Source of the DNA: Octopus bimaculoides
Lineage: Eukaryota
Direction: 5' to 3'
NCBI RefSeq assembly: GCF_001194135.2
Contig: NC_068986.1
Span: 16,935,193-16,980,430 of the forward strand
Length of the DNA stretch: 45,238 nucleotides
Shown here: positions 656 through 42,919 of the stretch, piece by piece
Layout: every line of letters starts with the position of its first letter
How positions within the stretch are numbered: the stretch's first letter is position 1
Translations under genes and position numbers: made by a program
Notes under the pieces: model-generated
What the model was told of the DNA's origin: nothing
The model's input: the letters and a program-made list of their open reading frames with translations, nothing else
Database searches by the model: none

Positions 656-1135
656 TTATTCAATAAAATCGCCATTCACTTCAACCACAGTCTCCAGACA
701 ACTGGAATCTCCTGCAACTCTTCTGGATGGTCTCTTTTTGTCTAAGTTGGTGATTGCTGCTTTAATCCTCGCCTCCAGTTCATCTTTGGTGTTACAAGGA
801 GTTTTGTTGGTCTCTCGCTCAGCTGCACCCCACACATAATAATCAAGGGGTTTTCAATCTGGGGAGTTAGGTAGCCAGATGTTAGGGGTGACGTGGTTGT
901 AGAAGTTGTCTGACAGCCATGACTGGGTCCTCCTGTTTGTGTGGAATAGTGCAGAGTCTTGCTGCTATACATAGGGTCTTCCAGCAGCCAACCTCTTAAC
1001 CAGGCAGTTGGTGAAGGTTTTGGTGTTCAGTCTGAGGCCATGTGGGAAGATTAATGGAGGCATAGCATTGCCATTGCTAGTGATCATGCCAAACAACAAT
1101 GTTGACAGGATGTTTGATTTTTATCACTCTCAGGA
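656..1135 (-). pseudogene. Degenerate Tc1/mariner transposase C-terminal half, DD37D (maT/mori-type)
   Basis: Manual translation: ...MPPLIFPHGLRLNTKTF...RPYV*QQDSALFHTNRRTQSWLSDNFYNHVTPNIWLPNSPD*KPLDYYVWGAAERETNKTPCNTKDELEARIK...TVVEVNGDFIE*. There are 37 positions between the D of QQD and the D of PLD. In-frame stops are present and the first catalytic D is not visible. Confidence 0.85.
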
Positions 1136-1253: not shown

Positions 1254-2032
1254 GATGATGATGGCTGTCCACTCGTTATCTAGGAAGACCATTGCTGACC
1301 TTCAGGAACATTGTGTGCTCTAGGACTAACTTATATTTAGCATTTGTGGCTCCGTTGGTGGCTAATGAGCCCTTATCTTGACAAGCATACATGACTGCAA
1401 ACATTACAGACCAAGCTTTCCCCATTCACTATACGAGCCGTGCACTTTCGCGCAGCTCGCTTAAGTTCTTCATGCTGGATACGTGCTCTGAAAATTGTCG
1501 ATCCCCTCCTTAACCTGCTTCCTCCATCTGTGGCGATGACAGGCATTGTTCTCCCAGTCAGTGTCCTGCATATCACAGGCCCTTAATGAGGACTTGACAC
1601 AGTCCTTAAATCGCAGCCTTGGTTTCTGCCGGAGTCTCCTTCAATTCAGAAGTTCTCCATATAGCATTTGCTTAGGAATCCTGCTATCCTTCATTCTAAT
1701 AAGGTGTCCTGTCCAATGTAACCATGGCTTGTGCACCATTGCCTCAATACTCAAGATATCAGCTGTCCTCAGGACCTGTGTGTCTGGAATTTTTGAGGTC
1801 CAGCCAACATTGAGAATGTGTCTGAGACATCTCTGATGAAAGCGTTCAAGGACCCTTACCTGACGTTTGTACAGAGTCCATGTCTCACATGAGTAGAGGA
1901 TTGATGTCAGTACACATGCATGGTACACAGCAACTTTTGTTTGCCTTGCGATGCCATGCTGGGACCAGACACGAGACAGAAGAGACCAGAATGAATTAGT
2001 TGCTCTCTGCAGCGTGAAAGATATTTCCTCAT
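1254..2032 (-). mobile_element. 5'-truncated RTE-clade LINE (3' end of ORF, 3' UTR, (CAT)n tail)
   Basis: ORF 1641..2096 reads TKVAVYHACVLTSILYSCETWTLYKRQVRVLERFHQRCLRHIL...WTGHLIRMKDSRIPKQMLYGEL. It continues RFKDCVKSSL...WRKQVKEG and reaches a C-terminal CNVCSHVCLSR motif, typical of RTE/BovB-like ORF ends. It terminates in CATCATCAT on the element strand. Confidence 0.9.
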
Positions 2033-2339
2033 CCACCCATCCATAAATACATACATACATGTGTGTGTGTGTTTTAATTTTGTCTACTGGAGTCAATCAT
2101 TACACACCTATTCGATATATAAATGCTTCGAACATATGACTCATTACTGTAAACAATTTTGTAGAGAATAGATTTTATTTAAATATGTATGCTGGTATAC
2201 ATTTAAATACACGGAGGAAACATTCTAATCTATATTATTAAATGTCTAGTAATATCGAACGTGTTGTTCTAAAGTATATTTCAATGAATCACTACATCCA
2301 CATGCATACATACATATTAATGTTCATACACACTTGCAT

Positions 2340-4046: not shown

Positions 4047-4236
4047 TTACTTTTTTCAGTCATGTGTCTGTGGCCATGCTGGAGCACCGCTTTTAGTCGA
4101 GCAAATCGACCCAAGGACTTATTCTTTGGAAGCTTAGTACTTATTCTATTGGTCTTTATTGCCAAACCGCTAAGTTACAGGGATGTAAATACACCAGCAT
4201 AGGTCGTCAAGCGATGTTGGGGGGACAAACGCAGAT

Positions 4237-4275
<39 letters not shown>

Positions 4276-4438
4276 AATATACAATGTGCTTCTTTCAGTT
4301 TCTGTCTACCAAATCCACTCACAAGGCTTTGGTCGGCTCGAGGCTATGGTAGAAGACACTTGCCCAAGGTGCCACGCAGTGGGACTGAACCCGGAACTAT
4401 GTGGTTGGTAAGGATGCTACTTACCACACAGCCACTCC
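4047..4438 (-). mobile_element. SINE family A (tRNA-derived, CORE-like, internal microsatellite), full length
   Basis: Head GGAGTGGCTGTGTGGTAAG with A-box-like TGGCTGTGTGG and B-box-like GGTTCAGTCCC. CACCTTGGGCAAG is a CORE-like motif. Internal (CA)n, and 3' end GCTCCAGCATGGCCACAGACACATGACTGAAA. About 16 copies or fragments occur in the window. Confidence 0.85.
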
Positions 4439-4475
<37 letters not shown>

Positions 4476-5505: not shown

Positions 5506-5733
5506 TATTTCTTTACTACCCACAAGGGGCTACACACAGAGGGGACAAACAAGGACAGACAAACGGATTAAGTCGATTATACCGACCCCAGTGCATAACT
5601 GGTACATATTTGATCGACCCCGAAAGGATGAAAGGCAAAGTCGACCTTGGTGGAATTTGAACTCAGAACGTAGCGGCAGACGAAATACCGCTAAGCATTT
5701 CGCCCGGCGTGCTAACGTTTCTGGCAGCTCGCC
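5506..5733 (-). mobile_element. SINE family B, full length with 9-bp TSD
   Basis: Head GGCGAGCTGCCAGAAACGTTAGCAC...GAGTTCAAATTCC and body GTCGACTTTGCCTTTCATCCTTTCGGGGTCGAT. Flanked by the direct repeat GCAATGTGC at 5497-5505 and 5734-5742. Confidence 0.85.
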
Positions 5734-6020
5734 GCAATGTGCATAAGCAATTCATTTTAAATAAAACAAACAACTGGCAGTGAGATTGTTTTTAACAGAT
5801 CCCCAAATGGGGCTCGTGGAAGGCAATGGGTTAGACATTTGAAATAAAGCATTAGGACTGGCGAACATCAATAACATTATTCCTTATTATCGTAAGCAGT
5901 TTCCATTGTACGTACATACAGATATAATTCATTTATTTATTTCATTATTGCAGTGTTTTCTCTCATTTTTTCACACATCCATATCAAATGGCAAAATATA
6001 TGAGAAAATGTATATCTTAC

Positions 6021-6101
6021 CAGTAAAGCAAGCATGTTAACTTCAAACCTCAATAAAGATGGTACTTACCTAAATGAAAAGTAAAAAGAAAGTATGTTAG
6101 C
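6021..6101 (-). other. Candidate splice signals: branch point + pyrimidine tract + AG|GTAAGT, 49-nt exon, second donor
   Basis: Minus strand: TGCTAAC-ATACTTTCTTTTTACTTTTCATTTAG|GTAAGT...(49 nt)...CTG|GTAAGA. Motif evidence only, no transcript data. Confidence 0.4.
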
Positions 6102-6279
6102 ATAATAATGATAATAATAATAATAATTAATTCGTTTTATTGGCCACAAGGGCTAATATCAATTAAAACATAAGGACAAAGACAGGATGAAGGTTACAAA
6201 AGGTTTTGTCCGAAAAGGTAGGAAAGTTCGTCTAAACAGAGGAAGAAAACGGAGAAAGATATAAATAAATAGATAAATA

Positions 6280-6321
<42 letters not shown>

Positions 6322-7180
6322 TATTGGCACTTGTACCGGTAGCACGTTAGAAAACATTCGAGCGANNNNNNNNNNNNNNNNNNNNNNNNNNNNNNNNNNN
6401 NNNNNNNNNNNNNNNNNNNNNNNNNNNNNNNNNNNNNNNNNNNNNNNNNNNNNNNNNNNNNNNNNNNNNNNNNNNNNNNNNNNNNNNNNNNNNNNNNNNN
6501 NNNNNNNNNNNNNNNNNNNNNNNNNNNNNNNNNNNNNNNNNNNNNNNNNNNNNNNNNNNNNNNNNNNNNNNNNNNNNNNNNNNNNNNNNNNNNNNNNNNN
6601 NNNNNNNNNNNNNNNNNNNNNNNNNNNNNNNNNNNNNNNNNNNNNNNNNNNNNNNNNNNNNNNNNNNNNNNNNNNNNNNNNNNNNNNNNNNNNNNNNNNN
6701 NNNNNNNNNNNNNNNNNNNNNNNNNNNNNNNNNNNNNNNNNNNNNNNNNNNNNNNNNNNNNNNNNNNNNNNNNNNNNNNNNNNNNNNNNNNNNNNNNNNN
6801 NNNNNNNNNNNNNNNNNNNNNNNNNNNNNNNNNNNNNNNNNNNNNNNNNNNNNNNNNNNNNNNNNNNNNNNNNNNNNNNNNNNNNNNNNNNNNNNNNNNN
6901 NNNNNNNNNNNNNNNNNNNNNNNNNNNNNNNNNNNNNNNNNNNNNNNNNNNNNNNNNNNNNNNNNNNNNNNNNNNNNNNNNNNNNNNNNNNNNNNNNNNN
7001 NNNNNNNNNNNGACATACACAAACACACAACGGATATGAAGAGTTCATGAAGCACAAAAGCAGCAAGAAAAGTCTTGGGAGTCTTAGTTTGATGTGAAGA
7101 CACTTGAGAAAGTGCAGAGAATGAAAATAAAGACTACAGCATGTGGACTTCATATGCCATCTGTTTTACTTTCTACTGCT

Positions 7181-7219
<39 letters not shown>

Positions 7220-7370
7220 TTTCTAATTTTGGTACAAGATCACAGAATTCCATAGGAAGTATAAGTGTGTTTGCATATACGTGGAGAGAGAGATAGTGTG
7301 TTTCAGTATTGAATATTTTGTTTTTCCATCTAACCTAAAATTGTTACAATACTACGTTTGCATTTTATTT

Positions 7371-7754
7371 GGAGTGGCTGTGTGGTAAGTAGCTTGCTTA
7401 CCAACCACATCGTTCCAGGTTCAGTCCCACTGCATGGCACCTTGGGCAAGTGTCTTCTACTATAGCCTCGGGCCGACCAAAGCCTTGTGAGTGGATTTGG
7501 TAGACGGAAACTGAAAGAAGCCCGTCGTATATATGTATGTGCGTTTGTGTGTCTGTGTTTGTCCCCCCACAATTGCTTGACAATCGATGCTGGTGTATTT
7601 ACACCTCCATAACTTAGCGGTTCGGCAAAAAGAGACCGATAGAATAAGTACTAGGCTTACAAAGAATAAGTGCTGGGGTCGATTTGCTCAACTAAAGGCA
7701 GTGCTCCAGCATGGCTGCAGTCAAATGACTGAAACAAGTAAAAGAATAAAAGAG
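7371..7754 (+). mobile_element. SINE family A, full length
   Basis: GGAGTGGCTGTGTGGTAAG...GGTTCAGTCCCACTGCATGGCACCTTGGGCAAG..., then an internal TA/GT tract, ending GACTGAAACAAGTAAAAGAATAAAAGAG. Confidence 0.88.
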
Positions 7755-8300: not shown

Positions 8301-8697
8301 CATCATCATTTAATGTCCACTTTCCATGCTCACATGGGTGGAAATGGTTTGACTGAGAAATGGCAAGCCGGGAGACTGTGCCAAGCTCCAATCTGATTTG
8401 GAAAAGTTTCTACAGCTGGATGCCCTTAACAACATCAACTATTCCAAGAGTGTAGCGAGAGCTTTTACGTGGCACTGTTACAGGAGCCAGTCAGGTGGTA
8501 CTGGCATCAGCCTTGCTCAAATTGTGCTTTTTATGTCACTGGCACGGGTGCCACTCAGGTGGCACAGACATCGGTCATGCTCGAATGGTGCTTTTTACAT
8601 GCCACTGGCATGGGTGTCACTCAGGTGGCATAGACATCGGTCACGCTCGAATGATGCTTTTTACTTGCCACTGACGGCACAGGTACCAGTCAGGCAT
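8301..8697 (-). mobile_element. SINE-like family C ((GAT)n tail) with four ~65-bp internal repeat units
   Basis: Plus strand CATCATCATTTAATGTCCACTTTCCATGC...TTTCTACAGCTGGATGCCCTT. GCTTTT(T)A unit starts fall at 8461, 8526, 8590 and 8656. Confidence 0.7.
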
Positions 8698-9045
8698 TCA
8701 GGGTCAATAAAAATAAGTACCAGCCAAACATTAGGGTCACTATAACCAAATTGCTTCATCCCTTGAAATTACTGGCCTTGAGCCAAAATTAGAAACAATT
8801 ATTATTATTATTATTATTATTAATTTTATTATTAACTACATAGACATGAAACCAGAAATTAGTAAACAGAAAAGGAAATATTTTATTCTAAGTACCAGTA
8901 CTTGACAGGAACTTTGGAAGGATTTGAACACTAAATGTAAACAATTATAATTAAATACCACAAGGTAATTTGCTCCGCTAAGGCAGGGGTAATAATCATC
9001 ACTAAGCATACATCTCTAAATATACATTAGTACAAAGACATCTGT

Positions 9046-12536: not shown

Positions 12537-13075
12537 ACAATGATCAGACTGAGTGATGAACATATATGGTTGGTAAATAGACACAGACAGTAAACAGACA
12601 TAGGCAGAGAACAGATACAGATGGAGAACAGATAGTAAAAAGGTAAATGTGGTGAAAGGACACAGATAATGAACAGACCAGATGGTGAACAGACCAGATG
12701 GTGAACAGATGTGTAGAGTGAACAGGTATTACAAATGAACAGAGGTTGCAAGTGAACAAGTATGAATGATGAACAGAGATGGAATGTGGACAGACATGGG
12801 TAATGAACGGACACAGGCATGAACGAACACGGGCAATGAACAGACATGGACCATAAAGAGACATGAACGATGAACAGACTAGGTGATGAACAGATATGGA
12901 TGATGAGATAAGGATGATGAAGAGACATGGATGATGAACTGACTAAGTGATGAACAGACTAGATGATGAACTGACTAAGTGATGAACAGACTAGATGATG
13001 AACAGACTGGATGATGAACAGACTGGATGATGAACAAACCAAATGAACTAAATGTAAAATATCTAGATGATGAAT
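12537..13075. repeat. Minisatellite, 16-bp unit GATGATGAACAGACT(A/G), degenerate leftwards
   Basis: Exact 32-mer twice (12930-12993), exact 16-mer twice (12994-13025), and many decayed GATGAACAG units upstream. Confidence 0.85.
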
Positions 13076-22344: not shown

Positions 22345-22845
22345 AATATTCTTTTCTACTCTAGGCACAAGGCCTGAAATTTTGGGGAGCAGGGCCAGTC
22401 AATTAGATCGACAGCAGTATGTAACTGGTACTTAATATATCGACCCCAAAAGGGTGAAAGGCAAAGTCGACCTCAGTGAAATTTGAACTCAGAACAAAGA
22501 CAGACAAAATACCACTAACCATTTCGCCCTGCATGCTAATGTTTCTTATTTTTTATTGCCCACAAGGGGCTAAACATAGAGGGGACAAAGAAGGACAGAC
22601 AATGGGATTAAATCGATTGCATTGACCCCAGTGCATAACTGGTACTTATTTAATTGACCCCGAAAGGATGAAAGGCAAAGTCGACCTCGGCGGAATTGGA
22701 ACTCAGAACATAATGGCAGACGAAATACCGCTAAGCATTTCGTCCGGCGTGCTAACGTTTCTGCCAACATGCAGCCTTTAAATTATCTTTTCTACTCTAG
22801 GCACAAGGCCCAAAATTTTCCTAACGTTTCTGCCAGCTCACCACC
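22345..22845 (-). mobile_element. Cluster of tandem SINE B copies with two alternative tails
   Basis: Two near-complete copies plus fragments. Tails are TCTACTCTAGGCACAAGGCC and TTATTGCCCACAAGGGGCTAAACATAGAGGGG (plus-strand reading). Confidence 0.75.
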
Positions 22846-37461: not shown

Positions 37462-37854
37462 ACTCTCTTTTACTTGTTTCAGTCATTTGACTGCGGCCAT
37501 GCTGGAGCACCACCTTTAGTCGAGCAAATCAACCCCAGGACTTATTCTTTGGAAGCCTAGTGCTTATTCTATCGGTCTCTTATGCCGAACCGCTTAGTTG
37601 TGGGAACATAAATACACCACCACCGGTTGTCAAGCGATGTTGGGGGGACAANNNNNNNNNNTATACACACACATACACATATATATATACATATATACGA
37701 CGAGCTTCTTTCAGTTTCCATCTACCATAGCCACTCACAAGGCTTTGGTCGGCCCAAAGTTATAGTAGAAAACATTTGCACAAGGTGCCATGCAGTGGGA
37801 ATGAACCCAGAACCATGTGGTTGGTAAGCAAGCTACTTACCACACAGCCACTCC
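37462..37854 (-). mobile_element. SINE family A, full length
   Basis: Matches the family consensus, with a 10-N gap in the internal microsatellite. Confidence 0.85.
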
Positions 37855-37868
37855 TGCACCTATGAGTA

Positions 37869-38369: not shown

Positions 38370-38935
38370 GAATATGCACACATATATGCATGTCTATATG
38401 TGTGTGTGTATATATAGACACACACATCTACATATATATAGATAAACACATACACATACGCACACACACATCTGCATACATATACACACACATCTGCATA
38501 AAAACACACATCTGCATACAAACACACATCTGCATACAAACACACACACACACACACATCTGCATACATACATACACACACACATCCGCATACATACACA
38601 CACACATCCACATACATANNNNNNNNNNTGTGTGTGTATGTATGCGGATGTGTGTGCGTGTGTATGTATGTATGCAGATGTGTGTGTGTGTGTTTGTATG
38701 CAGATGTGTGTGTGTTTTTATGCTGATGTGTGTGTATATGTATGCAGATGTATGCACACATCTGCATACATATACACACACATCAGCATAAAAACACACA
38801 CACATCTGCATACAAACACACACACACACATCTGCATACATACATACACACGCACACACATCCGCATACATACACACACACACATCCACATACACACCTA
38901 CATACATGCATACATACACACATCTACATACATAC

Positions 38936-40079: not shown

Positions 40080-40310
40080 TCTATTTCTTTATTGCCCACA
40101 GGGGGCTAAACATAGAGAAGACAAGGAAGGACAGAAAAAGAGATTAAGTCGATTACATCGACCCAGTGTGTAACTGGTACTTAATCTATCGACCCCGAAA
40201 GTATGAAGGGTAAAGTCGACCTCGGAGGATTTTGAACTCAGAACGTAACAGCATACGAAATACCGCTCACCGTTTCGCCCAATGTGCTAACAATTCTGCC
40301 AGATCACCTA
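40080..40310 (-). mobile_element. SINE family B, full length
   Basis: Matches 5506-5733. CTGTATAT on both flanks (40069, 40311) may be a TSD. Confidence 0.82.
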
Positions 40311-41143
40311 CTGTATATGTATATATATCATCAACATTTGTTGGTCAGTTTGACCAGATCAGGCAAGCTGGGGAGCTGCACCAGACTTCCGTCTGATTTG
40401 GCATGATTTCTACAGCTGGCTACCCTTCCTAATGCCAACCACTTTATAGAGTGTGCAAGGGCTTTCAAGTCGGTGTTGGGGTAAGGCTTACAGCTGTAAA
40501 TTCATTTCGATTCTCAGGATTTTGCCATTGCAACAGTGTACCACATTTTATTACAATATAACATGTGATAATGATGGAATTAAATGAGATTTTGTTTACA
40601 CTAATATTTCTAATGAGATTAAAGTTGAATTTGATTTCATAATGATTATAACAAGAGGATTAATATATAGAAGCACACACACACATGCTTCTGCATTTGT
40701 GTTTATGCATGTATACACACACACACACTCAGTAATCCACTTCTGTATTTTTAATTCGTTCTGAAATAGCAAAATTTCTTTTATTTGTTTCAGTCATTTG
40801 ATTCTGGCCATGCTGGAGCACCACATTTAGTTGAACAAATCAACCCTAGGACTTAATTTCTTGTAACCCTAGTACTTATCCTACTGGTCTTTTTTGCCAA
40901 ACTGCTAAGTTACAGGTACATAAACATACCAACATTGGTTGTCAAGCAATGGTGGCTGGGTGGGGAGACAAAAAAGACACACATACAAATATATACACAG
41001 ACATGCAGGAAGTAAATAGACATTTAATTTTCAAAATTTCTGATCTAAGTGTCTTAATATGTTTTCAGTGGTGTAGAATTTGCAATGTAATTATTTTTTT
41101 GCATTCCAGGCGCCATTGTATTAAACGTTTGCGAAGAGTAACC

Positions 41144-41524
41144 ATGCTTCGCACAAAAAATTCAACAGAACTGTCAGATTTTCAAAGAGGTTGTATTGTT
41201 GGGCAATCTGAGGCTGGTCTTAGCCAGCAAAAAATTGTCGAAAATCTTCAAATTCCTCTTGCTACTGTTAATAGAATTATAGTGCAATTGAAAAGCCAAG
41301 GAAAAGAATCAACAGATTCTTGTCCCAGTCGACTTGGGTACTCGGAAAGAAAGCTTTGCTGTTTAAAGAGAATAGTGGAAAACGAACCCCCGTTTGAAGG
41401 CTTCTGACATTGCAAAACAGCTAGAAGTTAGTCCAAGAATGCGTGTTACATCTCTGCATAAGCTTGAGTATTATGGACGAGCAGCTAGAAGAAAACCTCT
41501 CCTAGAACCAATTAATATCAAATA
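41144..41524 (+). pseudogene. Tc1-family transposase N-terminal (paired-like HTH) fragment
   Basis: ACCATG start; MLRTKNSTELSDFQRGCIVGQSEAGLSQQKIVENLQIPLATVNRII... then a frameshift near 41390 to LKASDIAKQLEVSPR...LHKLEYYGRAARRKPLL. The ELSDF.RG.IVG and GR.ARRKP motifs are typical of Tc1. Truncated before the DDE domain. Confidence 0.85.
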
Positions 41525-41742
41525 AATCATCGTCATCATCGTTTAACGTCCGCCTTCCATGCTAGCATAGGTTGGACGATTTGACTGAGGACTGGTGAAA
41601 TCGGATGGCAACACCAGGCTCCAATCTGATTTGGCAGAGTTTCTACAGCTGGATGCCCTTCCTAACGCCAACCACTCAGAGAGTGTAGTGGATGCTTTTA
41701 CGTGTCACCCGCACGAAGGCCAGTCAGGCGGTACTGGCAACG
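41525..41742 (-). mobile_element. SINE-like family C, one internal unit, abutting the Tc1 remnant
   Basis: ATCATCGTCATCATCGTTTAACGTCCGCCTTCCATGCTAGC...GGCGGTACTGGCAACG. Confidence 0.78.
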
Positions 41743-41766
41743 TACTTCCTGCATATCTGTGTACAT

Positions 41767-41805
<39 letters not shown>

Positions 41806-42919
41806 CACACATACACACACGATGGGCTTCTTTTGGTTTCCATCTACCAAATCCACTCACAAGGCTTTGGTCAGCTCGAGGCTATAGAAGACACTTGCCC
41901 AAGGTGCCATGCAGTGGAGACTACATCCAGAACCATGTGGTTGGGAAGCAAGCTTCTTACCTCACATCCCCACCTGCACCTGTGTGCAAGTATTTTATAC
42001 ATCATCATCATCATCATCAACAACATTTAATGCCCTTGCTCCATACGAGCATGGACAGCATGGTCTGACATGATGCAACAGGTCCAAAGACTGCATTGTA
42101 CTCCAATGCCTTCTTTGGATTGGCATTTTCAGTTGGATGCTCTACCGGACACCAACCACTTTACAGCATGCGCTGGGTGCTTTCTATGTGCCACCACTTA
42201 CCAGTGTGATTGCCATACAGCTTGCAAAACTACAAGCTTTCATATCGTTTCCATCTACCAAATTCATTCACAAAGCATTGGTTAGTTCAGGCCCGTAGTA
42301 GAAGACACTTGCTCAAGGTGCTGCACAGTGGAGCTGAACCTGAAATCGTTTGGTCACAAGACTAGCTTTGTAACTAATTAAAAACAAAGTGAAGGAGAAA
42401 ATCAATTTTCTTAAAAGACAATTTTCTCAAATAACATTGTCATTTAAAAAGATTGCCGAAATACTGTAGGATCAGGTGTGTAACACTTTGAGGTAACCTA
42501 AGTAATTAGCAGACCAAATCTTCCACTGAGGGAATTTAAAATCTAAAAATAAAGCGATGATTCTAATTCAGATGATTGTAATTTTTGAACAAACTCATTA
42601 AAATGATAAGTATTAATTGGTGTAGATATATATGTGACCGAAAGCATAATCAGCTGTAACCATCCTCCAAAGCTAATTAACCACTAACAAATTTCTGTTG
42701 ATATCACCTATTTTTGTTTCAATTAATTTTGAACATATTTCAAGTATTTAGTAAAATTTCTGCCATTAAACTTGTGTTTAGAACTTAATTCAACATGAAA
42801 GTTTGATGGAAGGTTTTAATTTAGATCACTTTATGACAGAAAATTTGTGTTAACAGAACCGAGGGTAGTTTAGTATAAAAAGTCTCGTGTGAAACTAATA
42901 GTTTCGATTACTAGTAAAT

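What the first reader, a model, noticed from the sequence alone, without database searches (positions are those of the whole stretch)
6014..6101. Candidate recursive splice site (ratchet point) with a 49-nt stop-containing RS-exon
Seen on the minus strand: consensus branch point TGCTAAC (branch A at 6097, 27 nt before the acceptor G), then an AG-free pyrimidine tract, then TAG immediately followed by a perfect donor GTAAGT (6069-6064). A second strong donor CTG|GTAAGA lies 49 nt on. The 49-nt segment has stops in all three frames. Established: this AG|GT plus cryptic stop-containing exon layout defines recursive splicing in long Drosophila and vertebrate introns. Inference: the window may be intron of a very long minus-strand gene spliced stepwise. 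I know of no cephalopod report, but I cannot search. It could instead be a non-coding or poison exon, or chance.
Basis: partly seen in the sequence, partly recalled or inferred. Interest (0 to 1): 0.7.

Follow-up and report, generated by a model that had tools for sequence, protein, structure and literature searches.

The report
Unverified recursive-splice motif, cephalopod DNA
The sequence really does contain a textbook "acceptor fused to donor" motif followed by a 49-base stop-filled mini-exon, but it lies in repeat-rich non-coding DNA of an octopus-like genome, and nothing available here shows that it is transcribed, spliced or conserved, so it remains an untested candidate of a known kind.

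Summary
TGCTAAC has its branch A at 6097. An AG-free pyrimidine tract follows, then TAG|GTAAGT at 6072-6064, then CTG|GTAAGA 49 nt further on, with stops in all three frames.

The AGGTAAGT core alone is at chance level: 1 seen, 1.27 expected per shuffled window. Core plus a strong pyrimidine tract is uncommon, about 0.003-0.009 expected per window. The full layout is expected about 0.0004 times per window. For an assumed 2.7 Gb genome, that still gives roughly 580 and 23 chance sites.

The layout matches the Drosophila and vertebrate recursive-site plus RS-exon architecture, with one exception. Position -6 is A, whereas 99.5% of fly ratchet points have TT at -5/-6.

The site sits in about 350 bp with no second copy in the window, between two same-orientation SINE copies, and the branch motif abuts a SINE (ATT)n tail. 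I found no host exon, no evidence of transcription and no orthologous sequence. The collections hold almost none of this organism's DNA.

Verdict: observation confirmed, interpretation cannot be judged. My estimates are about 0.5 for an unused chance motif, 0.25 for a true recursive site and 0.15 for another kind of non-coding exon. If real, it is a new member of a known kind.

The parts
6096..6102 (-). Branch-point-like heptamer TGCTAAC, branch A at 6097 (27 nt before the acceptor G).
   Evidence: Read directly. The window holds 4 TGCTAAC on the minus strand and 6 on the plus strand; I noticed that the aligned SINE A copies carry TGCTAAC on the plus strand. Its first T is the last base of the (ATT)n SINE tail.
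6072..6096 (-). Pyrimidine tract, 21/25 Y and AG-free. Position -6 relative to the acceptor is A (6075).
   Evidence: It is one of only 27 tracts of this quality that end in YAG in the window.
6070..6071 (-). Candidate acceptor AG (in TAG).
6064..6069 (-). Candidate ratchet-point donor GTAAGT directly after the AG. TAG|GTAAGT matches 8/9 positions of CAG|GTAAGT.
   Evidence: It is the only AGGTAAGT in the window.
6021..6069 (-). Putative 49-nt RS-exon. Its length is not a multiple of 3 and it has stops in all three frames.
6015..6023 (-). Second donor CTG|GTAAGA (GT at 6020-6019), matching 7/9 of the consensus.
6103..6192 (-). Context: diverged 3' end of a SINE-A-type element (6192-6131) with its (ATT)n tail (6130-6103), ending exactly where the branch motif begins.
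   Evidence: Alignment to three SINE A copies, direct repeat D5 and the match to 8763-8822.
5506..5745 (-). Context: SINE A copy in the same (minus) orientation, about 270 nt downstream of the second donor. The matched stretch is 5506-5733; the outer edge near 5745 is read by eye.
   Evidence: Self-BLAST finds at least 12 copies in the window; alignment.

Best explanation
The most likely reading is a fortuitous but splice-competent motif in repeat-rich, AT-rich non-coding DNA of an octopod-like genome. A T-rich stretch lies just beyond the (ATT)n tail of a decayed SINE. It happens to end in TAG and to be followed by GTAAGT, and a second GTAAG lies 49 nt on. As far as can be shown, it has no dedicated function.

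By inference only: if this DNA is transcribed from the minus strand inside a long intron, the spliceosome would probably see it as a cryptic exon. Because the 5' donor is the stronger of the two, the exon would then be removed, so the motif would behave like a recursive site without having been selected for that role.
For: - The core octamer is at chance frequency (1 seen, 1.27 expected).
- The stricter layouts are rare per window: 0.009 for core plus tract and 0.00036 for all features. For an assumed 2.7 Gb genome (size from memory), these correspond to about 580 and 23 chance sites. A scan of many windows will therefore meet them.
- The thresholds were chosen after the fact.
- The surroundings look like neutral DNA. 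41% of the non-N bases are repeated inside the window, and there are 11 assembly gaps.
- SINE, LINE and Tc1 remnants are the only coding-like sequences.
- No exon is recognisable on either strand.
- The branch motif directly abuts a SINE microsatellite tail.
- Position -6 is A, whereas 196 of 197 fly ratchet points have TT at -5/-6.
- Well-defined intronic recursive sites are few in large vertebrate genomes. Only nine fully suppressed sites were noted definitively in mammals, and lungfish use is no higher than in humans.
Against: - Three near-consensus signals at the right spacing are about 100 to 3000 times rarer than one per window.
- The 49-nt, frame-shifting, stop-filled segment matches the published RS-exon description of about 50 nt, out of frame, with the RP donor stronger than the exon donor.
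- The segment is not repeated within the window.
- The unmasked sequence has a 3.7% excess of T over A on the minus strand in 11 of 15 blocks. That is the direction seen on the sense strand of introns in other animals (from memory), so it is a weak hint that the minus strand is transcribed.
Confidence: 0.5

Rival explanations
1. It is a genuine intronic recursive splice site. The window would lie in a long intron of a minus-strand gene. The upstream exon is first joined at 6070|6069 after exon definition through the donor at 6020. The regenerated donor (exon|GTAAGT) then outcompetes CTG|GTAAGA, so the 49-nt RS-exon leaves with the rest of the intron. If the exon is included instead, its stops send the mRNA to nonsense-mediated decay.
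For: - All sequence-level features of the published architecture are present (compared).
- The branch A at -27 falls inside the -36 to -21 window of mapped fly recursive branch points.
- The combination is rare by chance.
- The site is not a repeat within the window.
- There is a weak T>A skew on the minus strand.
Against: - There is no evidence that the window is intronic or transcribed, and no exon was found.
- Conservation could not be tested.
- TT at -5/-6 is not met.
- A SINE tail lies 32 nt from the acceptor.
- Chance sites of this quality may equal or outnumber true ones in a genome of this size.
- No report of recursive splicing in cephalopods or molluscs exists in the searched library, so there is no clade-specific prior.
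Confidence: 0.25
2. It is an ordinary expressed non-coding exon on the minus strand: a UTR exon, an lncRNA exon or a poison cassette. It would span 6069-6021, and its start with GTAAGT would be incidental, or it would be an 'expressed RS-exon'.
For: - A strong acceptor and a strong donor lie 49 nt apart.
- Stops in every frame fit a non-coding or NMD-inducing exon.
- Mammals may harbour thousands of expressed RS-exons but few fully suppressed sites.
Against: - No transcript evidence was available.
- With GTAAGT at its 5' end stronger than its own donor, donor competition predicts skipping rather than inclusion.
- No neighbouring exons were recognised.
Confidence: 0.15
3. It is part of a mobile element or a by-product of one. 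In one version, the pyrimidine tract is the antisense of a decayed A-rich retroposon tail: on the plus strand, AATAAA at 6052-6057 is followed by an A-rich run at 6072-6092 and then (AAT)n. In another version, the whole about 350-bp segment is a repeat family that has no second copy in this window.
For: - The plus-strand reading can be seen.
- The site lies between two SINE copies.
- Antisense A-tails are a known source of 3' splice sites in primate Alu exonisation (from memory).
Against: - Sensitive self-BLAST finds no second copy of 5746-6273 in the window.
- No terminal inverted repeats are present.
- The (ATT)n run belongs to the minus-strand SINE tail.
- There are no Rfam matches.
Confidence: 0.08

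Closest known systems
Drosophila intronic ratchet points with cryptic RS-exons (Ubx, kuz, Bx; Duff et al. preprint 10.1101/006163; Joseph & Lai, PMC8605326)
   Same: Juxtaposed acceptor and donor AG|GTAAGT behind a strong pyrimidine tract. The branch A lies within -36 to -21. The downstream cryptic exon is short (about 50 nt), out of frame and closed by a second, weaker donor.
   Different: Position -6 is A rather than the near-invariant TT at -5/-6. No long host intron, no RNA evidence and no conservation has been shown. The site directly abuts a SINE tail.
Vertebrate recursive sites with RS-exons (Sibley et al. 2015, as summarised in PMC8605326)
   Same: A stop-containing RS-exon defined by a downstream donor, with a competing donor regenerated at its 5' end.
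   Different: Those sites lie in very long, conserved, mostly neuronal genes and are backed by junction reads and sawtooth profiles. None of that could be checked here.
Pseudoexons and transposon-associated cryptic exons in long introns (for example DMD pseudoexons, PMC7175933; Alu exonisation, from memory)
   Same: Consensus-like acceptor and donor pairs arise by chance in repeat-rich, T-rich intronic DNA and are normally unused.
   Different: Typical pseudoexons do not begin with a perfect donor, and this one has three near-consensus signals.

Membership tests
Intronic recursive splice site (ratchet point), Drosophila type | [quoted passage not shown] | tested here: met
   TAG|GTAAGT at 6072-6064 on the minus strand.
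Intronic recursive splice site (ratchet point), Drosophila type | Prominent pyrimidine tract with TT at -5/-6 (196/197 fly sites) | tested here: not met
   The tract is 21/25 Y and AG-free, but -6 is A and only -5 is T (one search read). The rule is known only for flies.
Intronic recursive splice site (ratchet point), Drosophila type | Branch point about 21-36 nt upstream of the acceptor | tested here: inconclusive
   A CTAAC motif has its A at -27 (range). Whether it is used as a branch point cannot be tested.
Intronic recursive splice site (ratchet point), Drosophila type | Short cryptic RS-exon (about 50 nt, out of frame) closed by a donor weaker than the ratchet-point donor | tested here: met
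   The segment is 49 nt with stops in all frames. The donors match the consensus at 8/9 and 7/9 positions (definition). This holds at the sequence level only.
Intronic recursive splice site (ratchet point), Drosophila type | Lies on the sense strand of a long (>10 kb) intron of an expressed gene | tested here: inconclusive
   No exon is recognisable in 45 kb on either strand. Only a weak T>A skew favours the minus strand.
Intronic recursive splice site (ratchet point), Drosophila type | Exon-to-ratchet junction reads, sawtooth coverage, recursive lariats | not testable with these tools
   No RNA-seq data are available.
Intronic recursive splice site (ratchet point), Drosophila type | The AG|GT motif is more conserved than its flanks in related species | not testable with these tools
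   A 24-mer spanning the junction has 0 hits in the metagenome contigs. The SINE control found only about 32-nt matches. ORF look-ups found nothing. The best relative of a 151-aa window ORF is 69% identical.
Vertebrate RS-exon site | Stop-containing RS-exon whose inclusion is suppressed by the regenerated donor | tested here: inconclusive
   The sequence layout is compatible. Inclusion or skipping cannot be observed.
   No other copy of 5746-6273 exists in the window. The genome-wide test was not possible.

The most novel reading that the evidence does not exclude
This is a working recursive splice site, with exon-defined RS-exon logic, in a cephalopod. It would be the first in any lophotrochozoan. 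That would imply that stepwise removal of long introns through cryptic RS-exons dates back to the bilaterian ancestor, and that it is used in the very long, repeat-laden introns of octopod genes.
Probability: 0.2. Interest if true: 0.5.

Novelty: new member of a known kind. Interest (0 to 1): 0.25.

Why it matters
If it were real, it would extend recursive splicing beyond insects and vertebrates to a third major animal lineage with very large, transposon-filled introns. It would also give a concrete site for testing whether cephalopods rely on defined ratchet points. The mechanism itself is well described, a single unvalidated motif adds little, and there is about an even chance that it is nothing. 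The more useful outcome is the class-level test it suggests: count such motifs on the sense and antisense strands of long cephalopod introns.

Tried and rejected
- **Repeat membership.** Sensitive self-BLAST of 5750-6365 and of the whole window matched only the (AAT)n runs. The site region has no second copy in the window. No terminal inverted repeats were found.
- **U1 snRNA pseudogene.** The plus-strand complement ACTTACCT resembles the 5' end of U1 snRNA. Rfam found nothing at gathering threshold for the whole window, and nothing relevant at E<=1 locally. ARAGORN found no tRNA. Rejected.
- **Host-exon search.** I took 139 stop-to-stop segments of at least 45 aa outside repeats and scanned them against Pfam as two concatenates, with no hits. 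Individual ORFs gave only sub-threshold Tc1/Sleeping Beauty HTH matches. Concatenation lowers sensitivity, and shorter exons would be missed.
- **Another exon-like pair.** A strong acceptor at 42374 with GGTAAGT at 42202 on the minus strand lies inside a SINE copy. Rejected as a host exon.
- **Orthologue and paralogue search.**
  - A 24-mer spanning the junction has 0 hits in the metagenome contigs.
  - A SINE 22-mer control found 4 contigs that share only about 32 nt.
  - Exact-product look-ups of four window ORFs found nothing.
  - The best hits of the LINE-ORF homology search were 52-69% identical. These included two Logan contigs of unknown species.
  - I therefore did not spend the last protein search on the short ORFs over the site.
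- **Taxon.** A SINE-derived ORF hit a 'hypothetical protein' of Argonauta hians at 61% identity. This supports an octopod origin but does not identify the species.
- **Stops in all frames as a signature.** Rejected, because 16% of all 49-mers in the window have them.

Full report
**Observation**

On the minus strand the window reads ...attattatG CTAACatactttctttttacttttcatttAG|GTAAGTaccatctttattgaggtttgaagttaacatgcttgctttaCTG|GTAAGAtat.
- TGCTAAC is at 6102-6096, with the branch A at 6097, 27 nt before the acceptor G at 6070.
- The pyrimidine tract 6096-6072 is 21/25 Y and AG-free. The nearest upstream AG is at 6154-6153.
- AG is at 6071-6070 and GTAAGT at 6069-6064.
- The second donor has its GT at 6020-6019.
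- The intervening segment 6069-6021 is 49 nt and has stops in all three frames.

**Is it more than chance?**

- The octamer AGGTAAGT occurs once on the two strands together. 3000 dinucleotide-preserving block shuffles give 1.27 on average, so the core alone means nothing.
- Adding the tract (at least 80% pyrimidine over 25 nt, AG-free) lowers the expectation to 0.0033 per shuffled window.
- Real DNA has more asymmetric tracts than shuffles do, so I also used the real sequence as the background. The window holds 27 such tracts ending in YAG (9 on plus, 18 on minus). The expected number followed by GTAAGT is 0.007-0.009.
- Of those 27, 8 have a YTRAY motif at 18-40 nt. A strong donor lies 25-150 nt downstream of 13.5% of random positions. 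The full layout is therefore expected about 0.00036 times per window.
- Scaled to a genome of about 2.7 Gb (an octopus-sized figure from memory), chance alone gives about 580 core-plus-tract sites and about 23 full-layout sites.
- The thresholds were set after seeing the site, so these figures flatter it.
- Stops in all three frames are found in 16% of all 49-mers here. GTAAGT itself supplies one of the three stops.

**Surroundings**

- The window is a eukaryotic scaffold with 11 runs of N and many microsatellites. 41% of its non-N bases are repeated within the window itself.
- A tRNA-derived-looking SINE has at least 12 copies. A second SINE family is also abundant.
- The only protein-like remnants I identified are a LINE reverse-transcriptase C-terminus at 1376-2096 (-) and Tc1/Sleeping-Beauty HTH pieces at 40850-41522 (+).
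- An ORF through a copy of the second SINE matches a 'hypothetical protein' of the octopod Argonauta hians at 61% identity.
- The candidate lies in a stretch (5746-6101) of about 350 bp that has no other copy in the window.
- Upstream in the minus-strand sense, a diverged SINE 3' end (6192-6131) runs into an (ATT)n tail (6130-6103) that stops exactly where TGCTAAC begins.
- Downstream, a SINE A copy in the same orientation spans roughly 5745-5506.
- An assembly gap begins 265 nt upstream, at 6366.

**Host gene**

- I found no exon. None of the 139 non-repeat stop-to-stop segments of at least 45 aa hit Pfam, and by eye nothing looks like host coding sequence.
- The only other pair of a strong acceptor and a GGTAAGT donor on the minus strand lies inside a SINE.
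- After masking repeats, the plus strand has 3.7% more A than T, in 11 of 15 blocks. T>A on the sense strand is typical of introns in other animals (from memory). This is a weak hint for minus-strand transcription and has not been established for cephalopods.

**Comparison with what is known**

- Fly ratchet points are juxtaposed 3'/5' splice sites with a prominent pyrimidine tract and branch points at -36 to -21. TT at -5/-6 is present in 196 of 197 sites. They lie in introns of 11-133 kb and are much better conserved than other AG|GT sites in the same introns.
- Fly ratchet points need a cryptic RS-exon. It is short (about 50 nt), poorly conserved and out of frame, and it is closed by a donor usually weaker than the ratchet-point donor.
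- The candidate meets the juxtaposition, the tract, the branch distance, the RS-exon length and frame, and the donor ranking (8/9 against 7/9 consensus matches). It fails the TT rule, because -6 is A.
- Location in a long sense-strand intron, RNA evidence and conservation could not be tested.
- In large vertebrate genomes, well-defined fully suppressed intronic sites are few. Lungfish do not use more of them than humans do.
- The searched library contains no report of recursive splicing in cephalopods or molluscs.

**Related sequences**

- A 24-mer spanning the junction is absent from the metagenome contigs.
- A SINE 22-mer used as a positive control found four contigs that share only about 32 nt. 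The collection therefore holds essentially no DNA of this organism.
- Exact-product look-ups of four window ORFs found nothing.
- The best relative of a 151-aa window ORF is 69% identical. The protein route to the orthologous locus is therefore closed as well.

**Weighing**

- Suppose true recursive sites in such a genome number tens to a few hundred, and only a minority carry all the strict features. Then true and chance sites of this quality are of the same order.
- I put the recursive-site reading at about 0.25, another kind of real non-coding or poison exon at about 0.15, a transposon by-product at under 0.1, and an unused chance motif at about 0.5.
- By inference from the donor-competition results: if the minus strand is transcribed here, a site this close to consensus would probably be used at some level and the 49-nt exon skipped.

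**Verdict**

The interpretation can be neither supported nor refuted with the data at hand. At most this is a new instance of a known mechanism in a new clade.

Noticed in passing
window 5506-5733, 22547-22766, 25100-25324, 30181-30408, 40081-40308 and at least 7 partial copies: A SINE of about 230 bp that looks tRNA-derived. Copies are 72-89% identical, and 8 of the 12 BLAST matches (the query's own copy included) are in the same orientation. A 32-nt core also occurs in four unrelated metagenome contigs, which may reflect a conserved SINE core domain.
   Followed up: partly
window 7333-7650 (-) and many other copies (e.g. 4097-4470, 32199-32674, 37491-37862, 41589-42065): A second abundant SINE-like family. 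An ORF read through one copy matches an NCBI 'hypothetical protein' of Argonauta hians at 61% identity, so a repeat has been annotated as a protein there. The match also supports an octopod origin for the window.
   Followed up: partly
window 1376-2096 (-): C-terminal remnant of a LINE reverse transcriptase. The best database relatives are only 52-69% identical: two Logan contigs of unknown species and an Anolis protein.
   Followed up: partly
window 40850-41522 (+) and 659-1120 (-): Tc1/Sleeping-Beauty-type transposase HTH remnants with sub-threshold Pfam matches. A mariner-like transposase C-terminus was recognised by eye only and has no Pfam hit.
   Followed up: partly
window 25797-26274; 8463-8694; 12764-13036: A 148-bp tandem repeat (3.2 copies, 91% matches), a 66-bp tandem repeat and a 16-bp minisatellite.
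   Followed up: no
whole window: (AC)n-type microsatellites are almost all oriented with AC on the plus strand. After masking repeats, A still exceeds T by 3.7% on the plus strand (11 of 15 blocks). This could be a transcription-associated strand asymmetry or a transposon-orientation effect.
   Followed up: partly
window 38410-38618 and 38629-38751, either side of a 10-N gap: Mirror-image (ACAC... against GTGT...) compound microsatellite blocks flank a short gap. This may be an assembly artefact or a real palindromic repeat.
   Followed up: no
window 6052-6130 (+): Read on the plus strand, AATAAA (6052-6057) is followed by an A-rich run (6072-6092) and then (AAT)n. The candidate's pyrimidine tract may therefore be the antisense of a decayed A-rich tail.
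   Followed up: no
window 42202-42374 (-): A strong acceptor-like site with a branch motif, followed 172 nt later by GGTAAGT. It lies inside a SINE copy, which shows that exon-like signal pairs arise within repeats here.
   Followed up: yes
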